A stretch of DNA of 38,435 nt from positions 40,440,456-40,478,890 of the forward strand of contig NC_068982.1 of assembly GCF_001194135.2 (NCBI RefSeq). The letters run 5' to 3'. The DNA is from Octopus bimaculoides. Lineage: Eukaryota. Position numbers and translations under genes: made by a program. Below, in pieces: positions 1,738 through 37,070 of the stretch. The number at the start of each line of letters is the position of its first letter. Positions within the stretch are counted from its first letter, which is position 1. Below the pieces are notes generated by a model. That model saw nothing but the letters and a program-made list of their open reading frames with translations. It was not told the DNA's origin and searched no databases.

Positions 1738-1815
1738 TATATATACATATGCACGCACACACACATATACATGTATGTATGTATGTATGTATGTACGTGT
1801 GTATGTAAGAATATA

Positions 1816-2374
1816 CAGGGTTATTCAAATGGAATGAACCGATTTTATTACGCAACATTTTAATAAGGAAAAGTAACAGAAAACTCCAGCTAAGTCACAA
1901 GTATTTACTCACAATTAACTTTTATTTCCTGTCTTACAAGTATTCAATGTAGCCACCAACTGTAGCACGGACACCACCAATGCGATATGAGAATTCCTCC
2001 TAAATGCGTATCAGCATGTCTCGATCCACTGAGTTGATCGCTGTTATTCGATGTTTAAGGTCATCGAGGTTAGTGGGTAGCGGTGGAGCATAAATGCGAT
2101 CTTTTACATATGCCCACAAGAAAAAATCCTGAACATCGAATAACAACAGCGATCAAATCAGTGGATCGTGATATGCTTATACGCGCCTGGGAGGAATTCT
2201 CCTATCGCACGGATGTTGCCTGAGCTGCAGGTAGTGGCCACATTGAACACTTGTAAGACAGGAAATAAAAGTTGATTGTGAGTAAATACTTGTGACTTAG
2301 CTGGAGTTTTCTATTGCTTTTCCGTATAAAAATATTGCGTAAAGAAATCGGTTCATTCTTTTTGAATAACTCTG
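1816..2374. mobile_element. Fold-back Tc1/mariner-superfamily derivative made of two inverted transposase 3' ends
   Basis: Flanked by TA at 1814-1815 and 2375-2376. Ends CAGGGTTATTCAAA...TTTGAATAACTCTG. Arms 1816-2056 and 2132-2374 are about 85% identical inverted copies by eye. The minus arm reads FFLWAYVKDRIYAPPLPTNLDDLKHRITAAINSVDRDMLIRI*EEFSYRIGGVRATVGGYIEYL*; the plus arm reads HRITTAIKSVDRDMLIRAWEEFSYRTDVA*AAGSGHIEHL*, a typical transposase C-terminus. Confidence 0.85.
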
Positions 2375-2387
2375 TATATACATATAT

Positions 2388-2553
2388 AAGGGCAGGCGTG
2401 CCTGTGTGATAAGAAGTTTGTATCCCAACCACATAGTTGCGAGCTCAATCCCAATGCGTGGCACGTTGGACAAGTGTCTTCTACTATAGCCTCGGGCCGA
2501 CCAAAGCCTTCTGAGTGGATTTGATGGATGGAAACTGAAAGAAACCCGTCGTG
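2388..2553 (+). mobile_element. SINE family A, 5' (tRNA-like) half
   Basis: Matches the head at 5877-6043 (A/B-box-like head, then caagtgtcttctactatagcctcgggccgaccaaagcc...gaaactgaaaga). Runs into (TA)n and a gap. Confidence 0.8.
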
Positions 2554-3054
2554 TATATATATANNNNNNNNNNNNNNNNNNNNNNNNNNNNNNNNNNNNN
2601 NNNNNNNNNNNNNNNNNNNNNNNNNNNNNNNNNNNNNNNNNNNNNNNNNNNNNNNNNNNNNNNNNNNNNNNNNNNNNNNNNNNNNNNNNNNNNNNNNNNN
2701 NNNNNNNNNNNNNNNNNNNNNNNNNNNNNNNNNNNNNNNNNNNNNNNNNNNNNNNNNNNNNNNNNNNNNNNNNNNNNNNNNNNNNNNNNNNNNNNNNNNN
2801 NNNNNNNNNNNNNNNNNNNNNNNNNNNNNNNNNNNNNNNNNNNNNNNNNNNNNNNNNNNNNNNNNNNNNNNNNNNNNNNNNNNNNNNNNNNNNNNNNNNN
2901 NNNNNNNNNNNNNNNNNNNNNNNNNNNNNNNNNNNNNNNNNNNNNNNNNNNNNNNNNNNNNNNNNNNNNNNNNNNNNNNNNNNNNNNATACGTAGAAAAG
3001 GTTTAATATATTAAATATGTCAGAATATAAACAAGAATATATAGTAACACTTAT

Positions 3055-3884: not shown

Positions 3885-4853
3885 TAAAACAGGGGACACA
3901 TGATGAAAGGAATGTTCTTTATGTTGCCTGTCTCGCTTCTCTATTTGTTTCTTTCTTTGTCGAAAAAAGTTCGTTTTTTAAGTTCTCGTTTCTCATTTTG
4001 TTGACGTTTTTTTTTTAAAGTCCTGTACCCATATATGCATGTATATATACATATATATGTAGGCATGTACATATATGTATGTATATATGCATATATTTAT
4101 ATATTATTTATAATATTATATGATCGAACGCCACGCATCCATTTTCAAGTAAGTTTTATCTTTATAATTCTGATGCGCACTCTATCCCTCCCTATTCTTT
4201 CTATGTATCTCCCTCTCTTGTTTTTCTTCCTTTCTGTTTTTCTCTCCCACCCTTTCCCTATTTTTCTCCTCTCCCCTTCATCGTTCCCTCTCTCTCTCAC
4301 TCTTCTTCCTTGACTCTCTCATTGCTTACACGTGACCAACGGCTATCCATCTTTCTTTCTTCCACTTCCTTCCTAAAGACAAACGTGCTTTTGCCTGTCT
4401 CTTCTGAAAGCTCGTTTTTCCAGCGTTCACCGCTTCACATCGTCTTGGCTTAACAGCCCTCACCGTTTGTTTTTACTGTTTTGTTCTTACTGTCCTGTTT
4501 TTGTTACCACTTTAACCCTCCGCAAAAAAAAATCCCAAATTTAATTTAATTTGCTTTGCGGGAAGGACTGTTTTAACAAAGTCACGTCTTATCCCTACCT
4601 TCGAAACGCGGAGTAGATAAAACAGGGGACAACTGATGAAGGGAATGTTCTTTATTTTGTCGGTCACGTTTCTCTATTTCTTTCTTTCGTTGTTCGAAAA
4701 AAAGTTCGTTTTCTATTTTTTTGCTTTTTATGTTCTCGTTTCCCATTTTGTTGACTTTTTTAATATCCTGTACCCATGTACCCATATATGCATGTATATA
4801 TACATATATAAGTAGGCATGTACATATATGTATGTATATATGCATATATTTAT
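3885..4853 (+). mobile_element. Terminally redundant non-coding repeat (about 733-bp period) with hammerhead-like boxes; Penelope-pLTR/retrozyme-like
   Basis: 3885-4098 and 4618-4853 are direct repeats. About 4310-4853 matches the minus strand of 36543-37070. Contains CACGTC-TTATCCC...GAAACGCG...GGGACAA-CTGATGA at 4583-4639. Confidence 0.6.
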
Positions 4854-5303: not shown

Positions 5304-5720
5304 CTCTTTTACTCTTTTATTTGTTTCAGTCATTTGACTGCAGCCATGCTGGAGCACCGCCTTTAGTCGAGCAAATCGACCCCAGGACTTATTCTTTGTA
5401 AGCCTAGAACTTATTATATCGGTCTCTTTTGCCGAACCGCTAAGTTACGGGGACATAATCCCACCAGCATCGGTTGTCAAGCAATGCTATGGGGGACAAA
5501 CACAGACGCACAAACACACACACACATATACATATATATACATACATATATATACGACGGGCTTCTTTTCAGTTTCCGTCTACCAAATCCACTCACAAGG
5601 CTTTCGTCGGCCCGAGGCTATAGTAGAAGACACTTGCCCAAGGTGCCACGCAGTGGGACTGAACCCGGAACCATGTGGTTGGTAAGCAAGCTACTTACCA
5701 CACAGCCACTCCTGCGCCTT
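5304..5720 (-). mobile_element. Full-length SINE family A with internal microsatellite
   Basis: Minus strand: tRNA-like head (TGGCTGTGTGGTAA A-box-like, GGTTCAGTCCC B-box-like), body, internal (TA/TG)n at about 5510-5554, 3' body ending in (AAAAGAGT)n. Confidence 0.85.
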
Positions 5721-5876
5721 ATATATATNNNNNNNNNNNNNNNNNNNNNNNNNNNNNNNNNNNNNNNNNNNNNNNNNNNNNNNNNNNNNNNNNNNNNNNN
5801 NNNNNNNNNNNNNNNNNNNNNNNNNNNNNNNNNNNNNNNNNNNNNNNNNNNNNNNNNNNNNNNNNNNNNNNNATAT

Positions 5877-6043
5877 AAGGCGCAGGAGTGGCTGTGTGGT
5901 AAGTAGCTTGCTTACCAACCACATGGTTCCGGGTTCAGTCCCACTGCGTGGCACCTTGGGCAAGTGTCTTCTACTATAGCCTCGGGCCGACGAAAGCCTT
6001 GTGAGTGGATTTGGTAGACGGAAACTGAAAAGAAGCCCGTCGT
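5877..6043 (+). mobile_element. SINE family A head, exact inverted copy of 5555-5720
   Basis: Base-for-base reverse complement across the gap at 5729-5872. Confidence 0.85.
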
Positions 6044-6046
6044 ATA

Positions 6047-6077
<31 letters not shown>

Positions 6078-8969: not shown

Positions 8970-9826
8970 CGAGCTGGTATCAATAAGTTCCCGGATTATT
9001 TCTGTAGAGTGCCAACAAATGGCAGCACACGGTTTCATTCGCAATGAGAGCTAGCAGTGACCTTCACGAGGTAGTGTGCCGAGTGACATCGCTGTGTTTA
9101 CTCGCAAGTTGTGAAATTTGTGTTTTTGTGATCACGTGTATGCTGTAGTCAGAGATTTTTGCCATGGACAGGAAGTTGGAACAAAGAGTCAAAATGAAAT
9201 TTTGCGTTAAACTTGGGAAGTCTGCTACAGAGACATTGAGCATGCTTCGGCGAGCTTACAGCGACGAGGAAATGGGTCATACGCAATGTTTCGAGTGGCA
9301 CGGGCGCTTCAAACGCGGAAGAACGTTCCTGGAAAATGATGAACGATTTGGAAGACTTGCTACGAGCGTCACCCCCAGAAATGTGGAGAAAAATCGTCAG
9401 CATCGTCGGGGGACAATCAACGGCATTGCTGCTACTTCTGGTCTGTTGCATGGGTCTGTGAAGACAATCCTAACACCGAGCTCTCCTCACTCGTGACTTT
9501 GCCGCCAAAAACAACATGGTATCCCTTCTACACCCGCCCTATTCACCAGATTTAGCACCTGCCGATTCCCATCTCTTCCCCAAGACGAAAATGCACTTCA
9601 AATGTTACTGTTTTAACACTGTTGCCGAGATCAAAAGCGAATCGCAGAAGCTCCTCGGCTCGCTTACGGAAAACGACTTCTAGGCCGGATTCCAGAAGTG
9701 ACAGGATCGCTGGAGCCTATGCATTGCTGCGTGAGGTGACTATTTCGAAGGAGATGATATTAAGACTTAAGGTAAGTTATTTTTTATTAGACATAACTAG
9801 TCCGGAAGCCTTTTGAAACCACCTAG
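8970..9826 (+). mobile_element. Internally deleted mariner element
   Basis: TA-flanked imperfect TIRs (CGAGCTGGTATCAATAAGTTCCCGGA / TCCGGAAGCCTTTTGAAACCACCTAG). Transposase remnants are listed separately. Confidence 0.9.
9164..9765 (+). pseudogene. Mariner transposase pseudogene
   Basis: N-terminus MDRKLEQRVKMKFCVKLGKSATETLSML...FEWHGRFKRGR (mariner HTH). The C-terminal HPPYSPDLAPAD motif is near 9530, followed by stops. The central DDD domain is largely deleted. Confidence 0.9.
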
Positions 9827-12204: not shown

Positions 12205-12690
12205 TATCTTTTACTTGTTTCAATCTTTGGACTTTTAGGCACAATGTTGAAGCTTTTCTTTTCTTTTTTTTTTTTGTCTTTTACTCTGACAAATCGACCC
12301 CAGCACTTATCTTTTAAAGTCTAGCACTTATTCTACCAGTCTTTTTTGCCGAAATGCAAAGTTATGGAAATGTAAACAAACTAACACCGGTTTATAAGCG
12401 GTGGTGAGGGACAAACACAATCACACACACACACGCGCATACACACATACATGATACATACATANNNNNNNNNNNNNNNNNNNNNNNNNNNATATATATA
12501 TATATATATATATATATACAAAGAGAGAGAGAGATAATACGGGCTTCTTTCAGTTTCTGTCTGTCAAATCCACTCACAAGGCTTTGGTCCGTTCAGGCCT
12601 ATAGTACAAGGTATTTGCCCAATGTGGAACGCAGTGGGACTGAATTGGGAACCCTGTGGCTGGAAAGCAAACTTCTTACCACACAATCAC
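12205..12690 (-). mobile_element. Full-length SINE family A (gap in internal microsatellite)
   Basis: Same tail/microsatellite/head order as 5304-5720. Confidence 0.8.
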
Positions 12691-13267
12691 CCCTATATTA
12701 TATATGTAATAAATAAATTATATATTATGCACTTCATGATTTTGTTATGCGAGAAAAATTGTCTTGCATGAAACCAGTGCGTGACGCAGATGTTGGGGAC
12801 CAATGTTGTATGATTAGTTATTTTTCGTCATGTGCATGTGACGTACATTTTAAAATTGGTTCTTGTGTTTTAAAGAATATGTTTGTTGATTTCATTTTGT
12901 GAGAAGCTGTTTACAGGAAAAACAAAATAATGGCCGTACCTTCAATTATCTCTAAGTTGTGTTGCATGATTTATAGGTTTTTTAAAAAAATTATCTATTC
13001 TGACTATTTGTATGTGCGATAGTATTTTGGTACGATGTTGTTTACTAGAGAAAGATTTTAGTACATGTTTCCCATAAAGTCGTCACCTTCAAATTCCATA
13101 ATGTTAAACCGTTCGTTGCCCTATATGTTACTTGAATATTCCAATTTTGACCGTCGTTCCAGCTTTGACCATCAACATTTTTTTCTGGTATATCATATCC
13201 ATATTCACTGATGTTCTATCGTCACCCATTTCAGAGCAGTAGCTGAAAGGATGATGTTTTAAGACAG

Positions 13268-17687: not shown

Positions 17688-17905
17688 GTGTGTATGTATG
17701 TATGCATGCATGCATGTATGTATGCATGTATGTATGTATGTATGTATATTCGACAGGCTTCTTTCAGTTTCCGTCTACCAAATCCACTCACAAGGTTTTG
17801 GTCTGTCCGAAGCTATAGTAGAAGACACTTGCCCAAGGTGCCACGCAGTAGGACTGAACCCGGAACCATGTGGTTGGTAAGCAAGCGACTTAACACACAA
17901 CCACT
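17420..17905 (-). mobile_element. Full-length SINE family A with internal (CATA/TA/TATG)n
   Basis: Same architecture as 5304-5720. Confidence 0.85.
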
Positions 17906-18291
17906 CTAGACTTGTAATTTTACCCAGTATCCATAAACAATCGCGTATAAATATGGGATATGCTGCTTTAGGTGCATCTATAATTGTTTTATTAAAATTA
18001 TGAATTTGTGTATCTGGTATTGCTGAGTTAGAAAAACTCAATTCTGTTTCTTGTAAAAGCTGTCCATTTAGGTTTTTATGAAATTTTTAAAATCGCTTTT
18101 GCGCTCTTTCATTCAAGAGCGAATAACTTTTGATGATAATTGGTAGGCACTCCAAGAAAAGTTAAGGAAATGTTCGCTAAGAGCTAAGTGTGTGTATGGA
18201 GGTTGATCTCGGGAAGAGTTGTAGCTAATTCGATGATATGAATGCGCGTATGAGCGTATGTATCTATGCACTTTCTTCTTGAATGACATGT

Positions 18292-26244: not shown

Positions 26245-26403
26245 GACGGGCTTCTTTCAGTTTCCGTCTACTAAATACACTCGCAAGGCTTTGGTCGACC
26301 CGAGGCTATAGTAGAAGACATTAGGCCAAGGTGCCACGCAGTGGGACTGAACCCGAAACTATGTGGTTGGGAAGCAAGCTCTTACTACACAGCCACTCCT
26401 GTG
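26245..26403 (-). mobile_element. SINE family A head
   Basis: gacgggcttctttcagtttccgtctac...gtgccacgcagtgggactgaacc...cacagccactcctg. Confidence 0.85.
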
Positions 26404-26405
26404 CC

Positions 26406-27020
26406 TGTTGTTCGGTGACGGTCCTCCAAGATCAGTTCATGAATTCTCATGATGTTTTCATTCGTTTGGGATGTCGACGGTCGTCATGAACGAGGTTGGT
26501 CTTCAAGCAGCAGGTAACCATTCCTGAAGCGTGGAAACCACTCGTAAACTTGTGTTTTGCTCATGGCAGCATCCTTGTAAGCTATTTGAAGCCTAACAAC
26601 TGTTTTGGCAGTCGTTTTTCCCAGCAGAAAATAGAATTTCATGGAAGCATGCTGTGCCTTCGTTTCAGGCATCGCAAAAATCAACGACAAGGGGAGAAGT
26701 ACTGCAAAACAAAGATGCACCACGTGGCAGTACGACGTAACAGGACGATGTCGGTCGGCAGACTGATGCCTGAGAGTCGCATGAAGTGGCTTCTAGCGGC
26801 GGAAACCCGAACTACTAAGGGTTTGTCCCACAGAGAACGTTTCTTCTCGGATATATGTAATTCAAAATATAAACAATGATAGACCAAAACTAACGGTAAG
26901 ATGGACAAAAAATGCTTATTTTTGTATACTTGCACTTAAATTTACATCCCGAATACTTCCACTTTTTACCCATCCCTAATAATATTTTAGCAAGTTTAAA
27001 GGGTTTTCCCTTTGTGCTGT
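26406..27020 (-). mobile_element. Second copy of the mariner 5' half plus its flanking host sequence
   Basis: Aligns with 24483-25160 through the mariner and on into aattcaaaatataaacaatgat...aaagggttttcc. Confidence 0.85.
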
Positions 27021-27032
27021 ATGTATATATAT

Positions 27033-27526
27033 ATAAAGTAGTTGTATTCTGTCAACTTAACGTGACAGTCCCAATAAAGGAATCATGCTACTGCTATTTA
27101 GCCCTAGGAAGCTGAACTGTTTCCTGTCGGCCTTGACACATTTCCTGTGTCCTTATGTTTACGAGTGGGAGACAAGCACCTCCACCCAGCCTAGCCTGCA
27201 TTCAGGGAAATGTTTCTGAGTTTTTGCTCGTCATCAGCCTGAAGTAGCATGACTAGCTGGCTGAAGATGCCTGTCAAGCTCTCGTAAACATATATATTTC
27301 TAGTGAAACACATTCACTGATTACAAAAATTAGAAATGATTTATTTCTAAATCTCACAGATAGACTTAAGCAGCAGTGTTACAATAAAGTAGTTGTATAT
27401 TGTCAATAGCATTAGTATGATTCCTTTATTGGGACTGTCACGTTAAGTTGACAGTATACAACTACTTTATCGTAACACTGCTGCTTAAGTCTCTCTGTGA
27501 GATTTAGAAATAGATCATTTCTAATT
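27033..27526 (-). mobile_element. Retrozyme-like element: 351-bp unit with terminal redundancy and an inverted end
   Basis: 27033-27055 repeats at 27384-27406. 27407-27526 is an inverted copy spanning the unit junction. A type I HHR lies inside. Flanked by (TA)n and (GATA)n. Confidence 0.7.
27201..27243 (-). ncRNA. Minimal type I hammerhead ribozyme
   Basis: Minus strand: TTCAGG-CTGATGA-CGAG-caaaaa-CTCA-GAAA-CATT-TC/CCTGAA. Perfect 6-bp stem I, intact core boxes, stem II GAG/CTC with a C-A mismatch at its base, near-palindromic minimal stem III, UUC cleavage triplet. Confidence 0.75.
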
Positions 27527-27582
27527 ATATATATAGAGAGAGATAGATAGATAGATAGATAGATAGTGTATTATATATCCAT

Positions 27583-27985
27583 CAGGGACATGCCGCCTAC
27601 GTAGGCAAGGTAGGCAGTGCCTACCTTAAATAAGATAGATCGATAGCAAAATTTTCCTTTTATGGTAAAATACGTACGTAATACAATAAAATTATGAAGG
27701 TTACTCTGATTACTATGCATACAATGCAAAATATTTTATTTTTTGAAAATTAGGTGGGCATAATTCACCCCTGCTTTTCAATCTCAGTATTTAAGCTACC
27801 CATGGTACTACTCTTATTACACGTGCTGCGTACACTCCGACAGCACCGTTTCTTTTACATGCTATAAAGGCAGAAGTAAATCTGCCTTTAACTCAGTCGC
27901 GCCTCTGCGTCTCACTTATTTTTTGTGTTTTACTACATAAAAGTCACCAACTGCCTACCCTGAGTAATTACTGACAGCGCGTAAC
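27583..27985. mobile_element. Probable hAT-like MITE
   Basis: CAGGGAC...GTAGGCAAGGTAGGCAGTG at the left end and CAACTGCCTACCCTG near the right end (subterminal inverted motif). TSD not resolved. Confidence 0.4.
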
Positions 27986-35062: not shown

Positions 35063-35600
35063 AAAAATAAGTGTGCATTTAAACACAAAAGAGGTGACCC
35101 TAACAGGACTCCTAACATGCTAGAAGGAGCAGTTAAAATCCAAACCACGGTTAGGGGTAATTTCGAAGGAAATGAAAAATAAAAACTTTTACCATATTTT
35201 GTTACCGGACCATGGTTTCGAACTTTAATTAGCAAATGAAATAATTTGCAGGGCGAAGTTCTTATCAGCGGGTACGCCAAAGATTAACATGTAATTATAA
35301 GGCAAAATAGCACACGTCTCATCTTTATATATTATAATTTTTCAAATCCACCGCACAAGCGCAGTTTTTGTCGGCAGCAAATAAAAATGTCGACTTACTT
35401 CAAAATTACTAAAATCAAATTCCGAAAAATATACAGGGTAGGAAAATTATAGAAATGTTTCTACCAGTGGCCTAGCATGCAGAAAATAGTCAATAGACTA
35501 TATATTATTCATATAAAATTAGTGTACATTTAAACACAAATGAGTTGACCCTAACAGGACACCTAACATGATAGATGGAGCAGTCAAAATCCAAACCCCG
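35063..35600 (-). mobile_element. Retrozyme-like element: 451-bp unit with about 87-bp terminal redundancy
   Basis: 35063-35149 and 35514-35600 are direct repeats at offset 451. A type I HHR lies inside. (GATA)n on both sides. Confidence 0.7.
35203..35274 (-). ncRNA. Type I hammerhead ribozyme with one core substitution (G8A)
   Basis: Minus strand: TACCCG-CTGATAA-GAACTT-cgccct-GCAAAT-tatttc-ATTTGC-taatta-AAGTTC-GAAA-CCATGG-TC/CGGTA. Perfect 6-bp stem II plus a 6-bp distal hairpin, palindromic stem III (ACCATGGT), GUC triplet, short bulged stem I. Confidence 0.7.
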
Positions 35601-35604
35601 ATTT

Positions 35605-36542: not shown

Positions 36543-37070
36543 GCATATATGCATACATATATGTACATACCTACATATATATGTATATATACATGTATTT
36601 ATGGGTACAGGACGTTAAAAAAGTGAACAAAATGAAAAACGAGAACACAAAAAAACAAAAACATGGAAAACGAACTTTTTTTCGAAAAACGAAAGAAACA
36701 AATAGAGCAACGAGACAGGCAACATAAAGAACAATCCCTTCATCAGTTGTCCCCTGTTTTATCTACACCGCGTTTCGAAGTTTGGGACAAGACGCGATTT
36801 CGTTAAGACAGTCCTTCCCGCAAAGCAAATAAAATAAAATTTGAGATTTTTGCGGAGGGTTAAAATGGTAACAAAAACATGACAGTAAGAACAAAACAGT
36901 AAAACAAACAGTGAGAGATGTTGAGACATAACGAGGTAAAGTGGTGAACGCTGGAGAAAGGAGCTAAGTCAGGAGACAGGCAAAAGTAGGTCTTATCTCT
37001 TCTAAAGCAAGAGGAAGAAAGAACGATAGCCGCTGGTCACGTGTGAGCAACGAGAGAGGGAGAGAAAGAG
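36543..37070 (-). mobile_element. Second copy of the 3885-4853 repeat family
   Basis: Reverse complement aligns with about 4310-4850 (cacgtgacca.cggctat, ccctccgcaaaa, tttgctttgcgggaaggactgt, cgaaacgcgg, ctgatgaaggga, tcctgtacccat). Confidence 0.85.
36733..36801 (-). ncRNA. Permuted hammerhead-like motif
   Basis: Minus strand: CGCGTC/TTGTCCC-aaa-CTTC-GAAACGCG-gtgtagataaaacag-GGGACAA-CTGATGA-AGGGA. Stem I (7 bp) and stem III (5 bp) are perfect; stem II is weak. Confidence 0.4.

What the first reader, a model, noticed from the sequence alone, without database searches (positions are those of the whole stretch)
27033..27526. 351-bp hammerhead-bearing unit with a junction-spanning inverted end: retrozyme/circRNA signature
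Seen: a type I HHR (27201-27243, minus strand) sits at the apex of a longer rod. ccagcctag (27186-27194) pairs imperfectly with ctagctgg (27253-27260), and tatgtttacgag (27154-27165) pairs perfectly with ctcgtaaacata (27281-27292). The first 23 bp recur 351 bp later. The next 120 bp (27407-27526) are the reverse complement of unit end plus unit start (79-bp arms 27328-27406/27448-27526, then 27056-27095), so the template was a head-to-tail multimer or a circle. There is no ORF, and the element sits in (TA)n/(GATA)n. Established: minimal type I HHRs with palindromic stem III occur in Penelope-like pLTRs and in metazoan non-LTR retrozymes of a few hundred nt that self-cleave into circular RNAs, and PLE insertions often carry an inverted end. 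Inference: this is a retrozyme-like family member, possibly undescribed in cephalopods. This copy has slightly decayed (stem II base C-A; ACATTT rather than the palindrome ACATGT).
Basis: partly seen in the sequence, partly recalled or inferred. Interest (0 to 1): 0.88.

Follow-up and report, generated by a model that had tools for sequence, protein, structure and literature searches.

The report
Decayed hammerhead-ribozyme retroelement copy in microsatellite
This is a real but mutated copy of a small non-coding mobile element that carries a self-cleaving hammerhead ribozyme and sits in a (TA)n repeat in the tandem-plus-inverted layout typical of Penelope-like retroelements; it is a known kind of element, not a new one.

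Summary
All the repeat coordinates hold. There is a 351-bp unit (27033-27383). Its first 23 bp recur at 27384-27406. A 122-bp inverted segment (27405-27526) spans the unit end-to-start junction. The hammerhead on the minus strand (27243->27201) is the only hit to a generic type I descriptor in the window, and 1 of 1000 shuffles gives any hit. Its loops (UAC/U and CAAAAA), 6-bp helix I and 4-bp helix II match 16 covarying type I hammerheads fetched from metagenomes. This copy has C10.1/A11.1 where 13 of those 16 have G-C (2 G-U, 1 unpaired). It has U16.2 where all 16 have G. It falls far below Rfam thresholds, so it is probably inactive.

The ribozyme-sense RNA folds much better than shuffles (z -7.3). 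The element has no ORF and no RT nearby, and both outer ends abut (TA)n. This anatomy (partial tandem, inverted 5'-truncated copy at the 5' end, microsatellite target) is the published signature of Penelope-like element insertions. Animal non-LTR retrozymes are thought to be non-autonomous derivatives of those elements.

Not shown: that it belongs to a multi-copy family, that it self-cleaves, that it forms circular RNA, or which organism it comes from. No other copy turned up in the window or in any reachable collection. I rate it a probable new member of a known kind, of modest interest.

The parts
27033..27383 (-). One complete 351-nt unit (U). In ribozyme sense, U1 = 27383 and U351 = 27033. 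It is non-coding, GC 0.41, with 5 CpG against 14.5 expected.
   Evidence: Direct repeat at spacing 351. Longest ORF 44 aa. Composition. The minus-sense RNA has MFE -124.9 kcal/mol, z -7.3; the plus sense has -106.9, z -4.9.
27186..27260 (-). Hammerhead domain: closing stem CCAGCUAG/CUAGGCUGG, UGC/GCA pairs, internal loop 1 (UAC / U), and the ribozyme core.
   Evidence: Sequence. Rfam HH9 alignment at 20.2 bits, E 0.003 within this stretch. Fold of the isolated domain -27.3 kcal/mol with helices I and II formed.
27201..27243 (-). Type I hammerhead core: helix I UUCAGG/CCUGAA, CUGAUGA, helix II CGAG/CUCA (C10.1/A11.1 mispair), loop 2 CAAAAA, GAAA, helix III ACAUUU, C17. The predicted cleavage site is between 27207 and 27206.
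   Evidence: Only descriptor hit in the window, with 1 of 1000 shuffles giving any hit. It scores 39.8 bits against model R1, built from 16 metagenome hammerheads (partly circular, see report).
27154..27292 (-). Imperfect rod of about 140 nt with the hammerhead at its tip.
   Evidence: Inverted repeat I3. Continuous pairing U92-U228 in the MFE and centroid structures.
27384..27406 (-). Partial upstream tandem copy (U329-U351, 23 nt). With the full unit it gives the head-to-tail junction CTACTTTAT|TGTAACAC.
   Evidence: Direct repeat D2, 91%; alignment.
27405..27526 (+). Inverted 5'-truncated copy, U286-U351 followed by U1-U56. It lies head-to-head with the direct copy, with a 2-nt AA overlap at 27405-27406. 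It carries the same unit junction (CTACTTTAT|CGTAACAC). It differs from the direct copy at 7 distinct positions of 122.
   Evidence: Inverted repeats I1 and I2; alignments; mismatch list.
27021..27032 (.). Left flank, (TA)n run abutting U351.
27527..27566 (.). Right flank, (TA)n(GA)n(GATA)n abutting U56 of the inverted arm.

Best explanation
27033-27526 is an old, mutated insertion of a small non-autonomous retroelement. The element carries a canonical metazoan type I hammerhead ribozyme. This is the kind called a non-LTR retrozyme, and recent work regards such elements as non-coding derivatives of Penelope-like elements (PLEs).

**Inferred mechanism.**
1. The 351-nt unit was transcribed as a head-to-tail multimer, or existed as a circular RNA after hammerhead self-cleavage and ligation.
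2. A PLE reverse transcriptase/GIY-YIG endonuclease encoded elsewhere nicked a (TA)n microsatellite.
3. cDNA synthesis was primed on that template from both target strands.
4. This gave two head-to-head copies: 374 nt on the minus strand and 122 nt on the plus strand. Each reads through the same unit end-to-start junction, and each ends against (TA)n.
5. Since insertion the copy has drifted. The arms differ by about 5-6% and CpG is depleted. The ribozyme has lost the 10.1-11.1 pair and the helix III palindrome needed for dimeric cleavage, so this copy is most likely inactive.

**Shown:** the hammerhead motif, the unit, the shared junction, the inverted arm, the microsatellite flanks, the strong strand-biased RNA fold, and the absence of coding capacity.

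**Inferred:** the RNA intermediate, the PLE machinery, the circular form, and past catalytic activity.
For: **Hammerhead.** It is the only descriptor hit in the window, with 1 of 1000 shuffles giving any hit. Its UAC/U loop 1, CAAAAA loop 2, 6-bp helix I and 4-bp helix II are the same as in 16 metagenome type I hammerheads. The stems of those 16 covary: 96.9% of cells are paired, and 9 of 12 pairs show compensatory changes. The best Rfam family is Hammerhead_HH9.

**Unit junction.** The same junction is present in both arms.

**Layout.** Partial tandem, plus an inverted 5'-truncated copy at the 5' end, plus (TA)n at both ends. This matches the PLE insertion features described in PMC8557442: partial tandems, an adjacent inverted 5'-truncated copy, (TA)n as a preferred target, an extra 'tail' at one end, and non-autonomous derivatives giving head-to-tail insertions.

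**RNA fold.** The ribozyme-sense RNA folds at z -7.3 linear and -7.2 circular. It is 18 kcal/mol more stable than the opposite strand.

**Coding capacity.** No ORF is longer than 44 aa.

**Size.** 351 nt lies within the published retrozyme range: consensus lengths of 51-972 bp, with class means of 313 bp (insects) and 342 bp (an anthozoan) (10.64898/2026.07.22.740005). Solitary monomers are reported as common there.
Against: **No family shown.** No second copy of the unit was found anywhere: not in the window, metagenome contigs, viral contigs, prokaryotic genome contigs, or among proteins via a six-frame trick. These collections hold little animal DNA, so this is weak evidence of absence, but a repeated family remains unshown.

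**Rfam.** It reports no hammerhead at gathering score, nor at E<=10 over 800 nt. The HH9 hit is 20.2 bits against a cut-off of 52.

**Ribozyme defects.** The 10.1-11.1 positions are C/A, where 13 of the 16 comparators have G-C. Reaching G-C would need two changes. That means either heavier decay than the rest of the copy suggests, or a family variant (C-G, one CpG transition away).

**3' ends.** The two arms end at different unit positions (U351 and U56). PLE copies normally share a 3' end, and the 56-nt overhang is longer than the published 30-40 bp tail.

**No partner element.** No RT or GIY-YIG domain is found in the window's ORFs of 55 aa or more.
Confidence: 0.68

Rival explanations
1. 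It is a severely reduced copy of an autonomous Penelope-like element: a solo pseudo-LTR or an internally deleted copy. It would then not be a member of a dedicated non-coding retrozyme family. The ribozyme and the tandem/inverted layout would be those of the parent PLE's terminal repeat.
For: The layout and the microsatellite target are PLE hallmarks. Hammerheads sit in PLE pseudo-LTRs (PMC4209133). In Xenopus, retrozyme consensus sequences match PLE termini, so the two are hard to tell apart from one copy.
Against: The full period is only 351 nt. Both arms read straight from unit end into unit start with no coding sequence between them. The ribozyme is the canonical type I form, not the minimal form described for metazoan PLEs, which has a long helix II, a short helix I and no helix III. 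No RT or GIY-YIG remnant is found in the window.
Confidence: 0.12
2. It is a remnant of a hammerhead-bearing tandem satellite array that was cut down and partly inverted by DNA-level events such as replication template switching, foldback or unequal exchange. No separate retrotransposition into this site took place.
For: Only 1.07 direct units remain. The inversion point has 2 nt of microhomology (AA at 27405-27406), as template switches do. The arms end at different unit positions.
Against: Both outer ends abut the same (TA)n tract, as expected for an insertion into one microsatellite. The inverted copy lies at the 5' end of the direct copy, exactly as in PLE insertions. Nothing else of such an array is in the 38-kb window.
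Confidence: 0.1
3. The inverted arm is an assembly artefact of a draft scaffold, created by wrongly joining reads from different copies of a repeat.
For: The window is a gapped draft with 3511 N. PLE tandem/inverted structures are known to trouble short-read assemblies. Another zero-spacer palindrome at 5526-6071 spans an N run.
Against: The arms differ at 4 of 79 and 3 of 66 positions, so this is not a duplicated read. The join shares only 2 nt, which is too short for a k-mer misjoin. No N run lies within 27033-27526.
Confidence: 0.05
4. The hammerhead resemblance is a coincidence inside an unrelated hairpin-rich repeat, for example a foldback or MITE-like element.
For: There is no Rfam call at curated thresholds. 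Two positions that define active hammerheads are wrong. The 79-nt arms score as generic miRNA-like hairpins.
Against: Chance expectation is about 0.001 per window for the bare descriptor. On top of that, three features not in the descriptor also match real type I hammerheads: UAC before helix I, the CAAAAA loop 2, and UG after helix I.
Confidence: 0.03

Closest known systems
Metazoan non-LTR retrozymes (Cervera & de la Pena 2020, PMC7229834; Li, Clavereau & Pollet 2026 preprint, 10.64898/2026.07.22.740005)
   Same: A non-coding unit of a few hundred nt with GC below 45%, a canonical type I hammerhead, head-to-tail unit junctions, highly self-paired RNA, and dispersed monomers reported as common.
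   Different: Only one complete unit and one ribozyme are present here, and the ribozyme is mutated. An inverted junction-spanning arm is attached. Family copy number, circular RNA and cleavage are untested. The host organism is unknown.
Penelope-like element insertions and their non-autonomous derivatives (Craig et al. 2021, PMC8557442; Cervera & de la Pena 2014, PMC4209133)
   Same: A partial tandem (pseudo-LTR), an inverted 5'-truncated copy next to the 5' end, a (TA)n microsatellite target, extra sequence at one end, and a hammerhead in the repeat.
   Different: There is no RT/GIY-YIG ORF. The ribozyme is the canonical type I form rather than the minimal PLE form. The one-sided extension is 56 nt rather than 30-40 bp, and the two copies do not share a 3' end.
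Rfam Hammerhead_HH9 (RF02275), the conserved amniote type I hammerhead
   Same: UAC before a 6-bp helix I, CUGAUGA, a 4-bp helix II closed by a CAAAAA loop, GAAA, and UC before the 3' strand of helix I (alignment).
   Different: It scores 20.2 bits against a cut-off of 52. The stem sequences differ, helix III is much shorter (4 nt against 9 nt unaligned), 10.1/11.1 is mispaired, and the genomic setting is different.
L1 'twin priming' inversions
   Same: Two cDNAs primed from the two strands of one target site, joined head-to-head at a short microhomology.
   Different: That mechanism is established for LINE-1, not for PLEs. Here it is only an analogy for how the inverted arm could form.

Membership tests
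Hammerhead ribozyme, canonical metazoan type I | Conserved core: C3-A9 (CUGAUGA), G12-A14, A15.1-U16.1, H17 | tested here: met
   All of these positions are present at 27243->27201 on the minus strand.
Hammerhead ribozyme, canonical metazoan type I | Helix I of 6 bp, open-ended (type I topology), followed by internal loop 1 and a closing stem | tested here: met
   UUCAGG/CCUGAA is perfect. Loop 1 is UAC / U, followed by UGC/GCA and CCAGCUAG/CUAGGCUGG.
Hammerhead ribozyme, canonical metazoan type I | Helix II of 4 bp closed by the G10.1-C11.1 pair | tested here: not met
   The sequence is CGAG/CUCA, so 10.1/11.1 is C/A. In the 16 comparators this pair is G-C 13 times, G-U twice and unpaired once.
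Hammerhead ribozyme, canonical metazoan type I | Loop nucleotides of the loop 1 / loop 2 tertiary contact | tested here: met
   UAC and CAAAAA are identical to the HH9 consensus and to the metagenome hammerheads. The contact itself cannot be tested here.
Hammerhead ribozyme, canonical metazoan type I | Short helix III with a palindromic loop, allowing dimeric cleavage | tested here: not met
   The sequence is ACAUUU, one change from the palindrome ACAUGU. C15.2-G16.2 is present in all 16 comparators.
Hammerhead ribozyme, canonical metazoan type I | Score at or above an Rfam hammerhead gathering threshold | tested here: not met
   No hit at gathering score. No hammerhead hit at E<=10 over 26900-27700. 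HH9 scores 20.2 bits against 52 on a 76-nt stretch.
Hammerhead ribozyme, canonical metazoan type I | Self-cleavage | not testable with these tools
   This needs in vitro transcription of the monomer and the dimer.
Non-LTR retrozyme | Tandem array (two or more units), each unit with a type I hammerhead | tested here: not met
   There are 1.07 direct units plus a 0.35-unit inverted fragment, and a single hammerhead. Head-to-tail junctions are present in both arms, so the source was multimeric or circular. Solitary monomers are described as derivatives.
Non-LTR retrozyme | Non-coding, low GC (below 45%), unit of a few hundred nt | tested here: met
   The longest ORF is 44 aa. GC is 0.407 and the unit is 351 nt.
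Non-LTR retrozyme | Multi-copy family in the host genome | not testable with these tools
   No other copy is in the window. There were no hits in the reachable collections, which hold little animal DNA. The source genome is not available.
Non-LTR retrozyme | Expressed as unit-length circular RNA | not testable with these tools
   No transcriptome data were available. The only indirect evidence is a stable, strand-biased fold.
Penelope-like element insertion | Partial tandem (pseudo-LTR) with an inverted 5'-truncated copy adjacent to the 5' end | tested here: met
   In ribozyme sense the order is inverted 122 nt, then 23 nt partial, then the 351-nt full unit.
Penelope-like element insertion | Insertion into a microsatellite, often (TA)n | tested here: met
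   (TA)n lies at both outer ends.
Penelope-like element insertion | 30-40 bp 'tail' extension at one end only | tested here: inconclusive
   The inverted arm runs 56 nt past the unit end (U1-U56). This could be such a tail, but it is longer than described.
Penelope-like element insertion | ORF with RT and GIY-YIG endonuclease | tested here: not met
   There is none in the element or in the window's ORFs of 55 aa or more; only Mos1 HTH fragments were found. So at most this is a non-autonomous derivative.

The most novel reading that the evidence does not exclude
The unit represents an uncatalogued retrozyme family, possibly with an unusual C10.1-G11.1 closing pair in helix II, which is one CpG transition away from this copy. 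The family would still be active elsewhere in the genome as a 351-nt circular RNA. On this reading, the locus is a fossil of reverse transcription of that circle, primed from both strands of a (TA)n target. The two arms end at different points of the circle, and each reads through the ligation-independent unit junction. That would be direct genomic evidence for circle-templated, twin-primed integration by PLE machinery.
Probability: 0.2. Interest if true: 0.5.

Novelty: new member of a known kind. Interest (0 to 1): 0.3.

Why it matters
Hammerhead-bearing retrozymes and PLE-associated ribozymes are already known across animals, including molluscs, so finding one more decayed copy changes little.

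Two things give it modest value. Second, the two head-to-head arms both cross the unit junction and end at different unit positions against (TA)n. That is a clean single-locus record of how such elements integrate, and the literature calls this step of PLE biology unresolved.

Tried and rejected
1. **Rfam.** The whole window at gathering thresholds gave nothing. The 800-nt region at E<=10 gave only generic miRNA-hairpin matches to the 79-nt inverted arms and no hammerhead. I reject the miRNA matches as artefacts of a long perfect hairpin.
2. **Other copies in the window.** Sensitive blastn found none.
3. **Family-specific DNA patterns in public collections.** The hammerhead pattern gave 0 hits in viral and metagenome contigs. 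A 22-mer from the conserved terminal hairpin gave 0 hits in prokaryotic genome contigs and viral contigs.
4. **Pseudo-protein trick.** A six-frame translation of the unit, with stops as X, was searched against 5.8 billion predicted proteins to catch spurious ORFs called on other copies. It gave 0 hits.
5. **Exact-ORF look-ups.** These were meant to find the source contig and organism. Nothing was on record.
6. **Organism identification through a mariner ORF.** It returned only anonymous JGI SETMAR-like proteins. The organism stays unknown.
7. **Partner PLE.** A Pfam scan of all non-repetitive ORFs of 55 aa or more found only Mos1 HTH_48 fragments. Passing whole frames as DNA references is not accepted by the tool.
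8. **Model R1.** It gives 39.8 bits, but I do not use its E-value as independent evidence. The seeds were fetched with a pattern abstracted from the candidate, so about 20 fixed positions match by construction.
9. **Similarity to the second element.** A test between unit U and the second tandem element at 35064-35603 found none above shuffles.
10. **tRNA scan.** It was run to test a SINE origin and found none.

Full report
**What is in the sequence**

The window is a gapped draft of a eukaryotic, animal-like genome. It has 3511 N, GC 0.365 and dense microsatellites, and Mos1/mariner HTH fragments are the only recognisable protein domains.

- 27033-27055 recurs at 27384-27406 (23 nt, 91%, spacing 351).
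- 27328-27406 is inverted at 27448-27526 (79 nt, 95%).
- 27033-27098 is inverted at 27405-27470 (66 nt, 95%).

I number the unit in ribozyme sense (minus strand), with U1 = 27383 and U351 = 27033. The locus then reads as two head-to-head copies:
- On the minus strand: U329-351 followed by U1-351, ending at 27033.
- On the plus strand: U286-351 followed by U1-56, ending at 27526.

The two copies meet at 27405/27406 with a 2-nt AA overlap. Each contains the same end-to-start junction, CTACTTTAT|(T/C)GTAACAC. They differ at 4 of 79 and 3 of 66 positions. Both outer ends abut (TA)n, which on the right continues into (GA)n(GATA)n.

**Is the hammerhead real?**

The minus strand 27243->27201 reads UUCAGG-CUGAUGA-CGAG-CAAAAA-CUCA-GAAA-CAUUUC|CCUGAA.

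I scanned both strands of the window with a generic descriptor taken from the published description of type I hammerheads. It asks for a 6-bp helix I, a 4-bp helix II (one mispair allowed in each), CUGANGA, GAAA and UH. This site is the only hit. Only 1 of 1000 dinucleotide shuffles of the window gives any hit, and none does at the stringency actually observed.

Rfam does not report a hammerhead at curated thresholds, nor at E<=10 over 800 nt. On the 76-nt domain alone, the best family is Hammerhead_HH9, at 20.2 bits against a cut-off of 52, with E 0.003 for that small search. That alignment shows three features not in my descriptor:
- UAC just before helix I.
- A CAAAAA loop 2.
- U after the 3' strand of helix I.

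To check that these features belong to real ribozymes, I scanned metagenome contigs for TAC-N6-CTGATGA-N4-CAAANA-N4-GAAAC and got 45 loci. At least 16 of them are complete type I hammerheads whose stems covary. In these, 96.9% of cells are paired, 9 of 12 pairs show compensatory changes, and slid controls reach only 21-45%.

These comparators share the candidate's architecture. That is the 'canonical metazoan' form of PMC4209133, not the minimal PLE form. A model built from them scores the candidate at 39.8 bits. That score is partly circular, because the fetching pattern came from the candidate.

The comparison also shows what is wrong with this copy:
- 10.1/11.1 is C/A, where the 16 comparators have G-C 13 times, G-U twice and no pair once.
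- 16.2 is U, where all 16 have G. This breaks the ACAUGU palindrome that lets two copies form an extended helix III.

So the motif is hammerhead-derived beyond reasonable doubt, but this copy is probably inactive. A11.1 could come from G by a CpG transition, which would imply an ancestral C-G pair. That cannot be checked without relatives.

**The RNA**

The ribozyme-sense unit folds at -124.9 kcal/mol against -86.5 for shuffles (z -7.3). The opposite strand folds at -106.9 (z -4.9). Folded as a circle, the ribozyme-sense unit gives -120.1 (z -7.2).

The hammerhead sits at the tip of a rod of about 140 nt (27292->27156). In the whole-unit fold it is held in a non-catalytic pairing. This matches what is described for ribozyme-bearing circular RNAs, but a fold prediction does not show that such an RNA exists.

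**What it is**

The element has no ORF above 44 aa. No RT or GIY-YIG domain was found among the window's ORFs of 55 aa or more.

Its layout matches point for point the published description of Penelope-like element insertions (PMC8557442):
- Partial tandems that form pseudo-LTRs.
- An inverted 5'-truncated copy adjacent to the 5' end.
- A bias for microsatellites, often (TA)n.
- An extra tail at one end.
- Non-autonomous derivatives that give head-to-tail insertions.

Animal non-LTR retrozymes are non-coding tandem units of 51-972 bp with type I hammerheads. They often occur as dispersed monomers and are now argued to be non-autonomous PLE derivatives (PMC7229834; 10.64898/2026.07.22.740005).

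The best reading is therefore a decayed insertion of such an element. Its template was multimeric or circular, because both arms cross the unit junction.

Two details depart from the textbook PLE picture. The arms end at different unit positions (U351 and U56), and the one-sided extension is 56 nt rather than 30-40. Priming at A/T-rich internal sites of a repeating or circular template by a (TA)n target end would explain both, but that is inference.

The 5-6% arm divergence and the CpG depletion (5 observed against 14.5 expected) suggest an old event.

**What could not be shown**

I found no other copy of the unit in any reachable collection. I also could not identify the organism.

In the papers I could search, no article reports hammerheads or retrozymes in cephalopods. 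Only PLEs are mentioned there.

**Rivals**

I considered four rivals:
- A solo pseudo-LTR of an autonomous PLE.
- A rearranged satellite remnant.
- A misassembled inverted arm.
- A chance look-alike.

The evidence for and against each is given in the rival entries. None of them fits as many features as the retrozyme/PLE reading.

**A second element**

A second partial-tandem element lies at 35064-35603. It is a 451-bp unit plus an 89-bp repeat, flanked by (GATA)n, with a weak hammerhead-like motif. It hints that PLE-style insertions recur in this genome. However, its ribozyme motif is not convincing, and it is unrelated in sequence to the first unit.

**Verdict**

This is a known kind of element, of modest interest.

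Noticed in passing
window 35064-35603 (motif at 35203-35274, minus strand): A second partial-tandem element: a 451-bp unit followed by an 89-bp repeat of its start (89% identical), flanked by (GATA)n on both sides. On the minus strand it carries a weak hammerhead-like motif, UAC-CCG-CUGAUAA-GAAC...GUUC-GAAAC-CAUG-GUC-CGG. The motif has G8->A, a 34-nt loop 2 and only a 3-bp helix I. It scores 13.2 bits, E 0.08, with model R1. Rfam gives no hit, the fold z-score is only -2.6, and there is no similarity to the 351-nt unit.
   Followed up: partly
window 9164-9496 (+), about 24.2-24.8 kb, about 26.4-26.8 kb (-): Fragments of Mos1/mariner-type transposase N-termini (Pfam HTH_48, 20-32 bits), with broken frames. 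One lies just upstream of the hammerhead element.
   Followed up: partly
window 2398-2561, 5560-5715, 5886-6030, 12548-12694, 17762-17906, 26255-26380: A dispersed repeat of about 150 nt in at least six copies (77-94% identical, both orientations), usually next to microsatellites or N gaps. It may be a SINE-like element. ARAGORN finds no tRNA in the window.
   Followed up: no
window 5526-5798 / 5799-6071: A zero-spacer palindrome of 273 nt per arm, 98% complementary, that spans an N run. It looks more like a scaffolding or gap artefact than biology.
   Followed up: no
window 1802-2048 / 2142-2388; also 4528-4729 / 36650-36851: An inverted repeat of 247 nt (85%) with a 93-nt spacer, foldback- or MITE-like. 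Separately, a 202-nt repeat (89%) is present in inverted orientation 32 kb apart.
   Followed up: no
loci L012, L016, L021, L027, L040, L045 (metagenome contigs): Contigs of 1.0-2.5 kb carrying a complete canonical type I hammerhead. They have direct repeats of 127-188 nt (98-100% identical) that reach the contig ends, so they are circular or tandem units of about 0.9-1.4 kb of unknown origin.
   Followed up: no
loci L028 and L041: Two metagenome contigs carry a hammerhead matching the Rfam HH9 consensus through its aligned core (CUGCAG helix I, GCUC/GAGC helix II). They are probably amniote host DNA in the samples.
   Followed up: no
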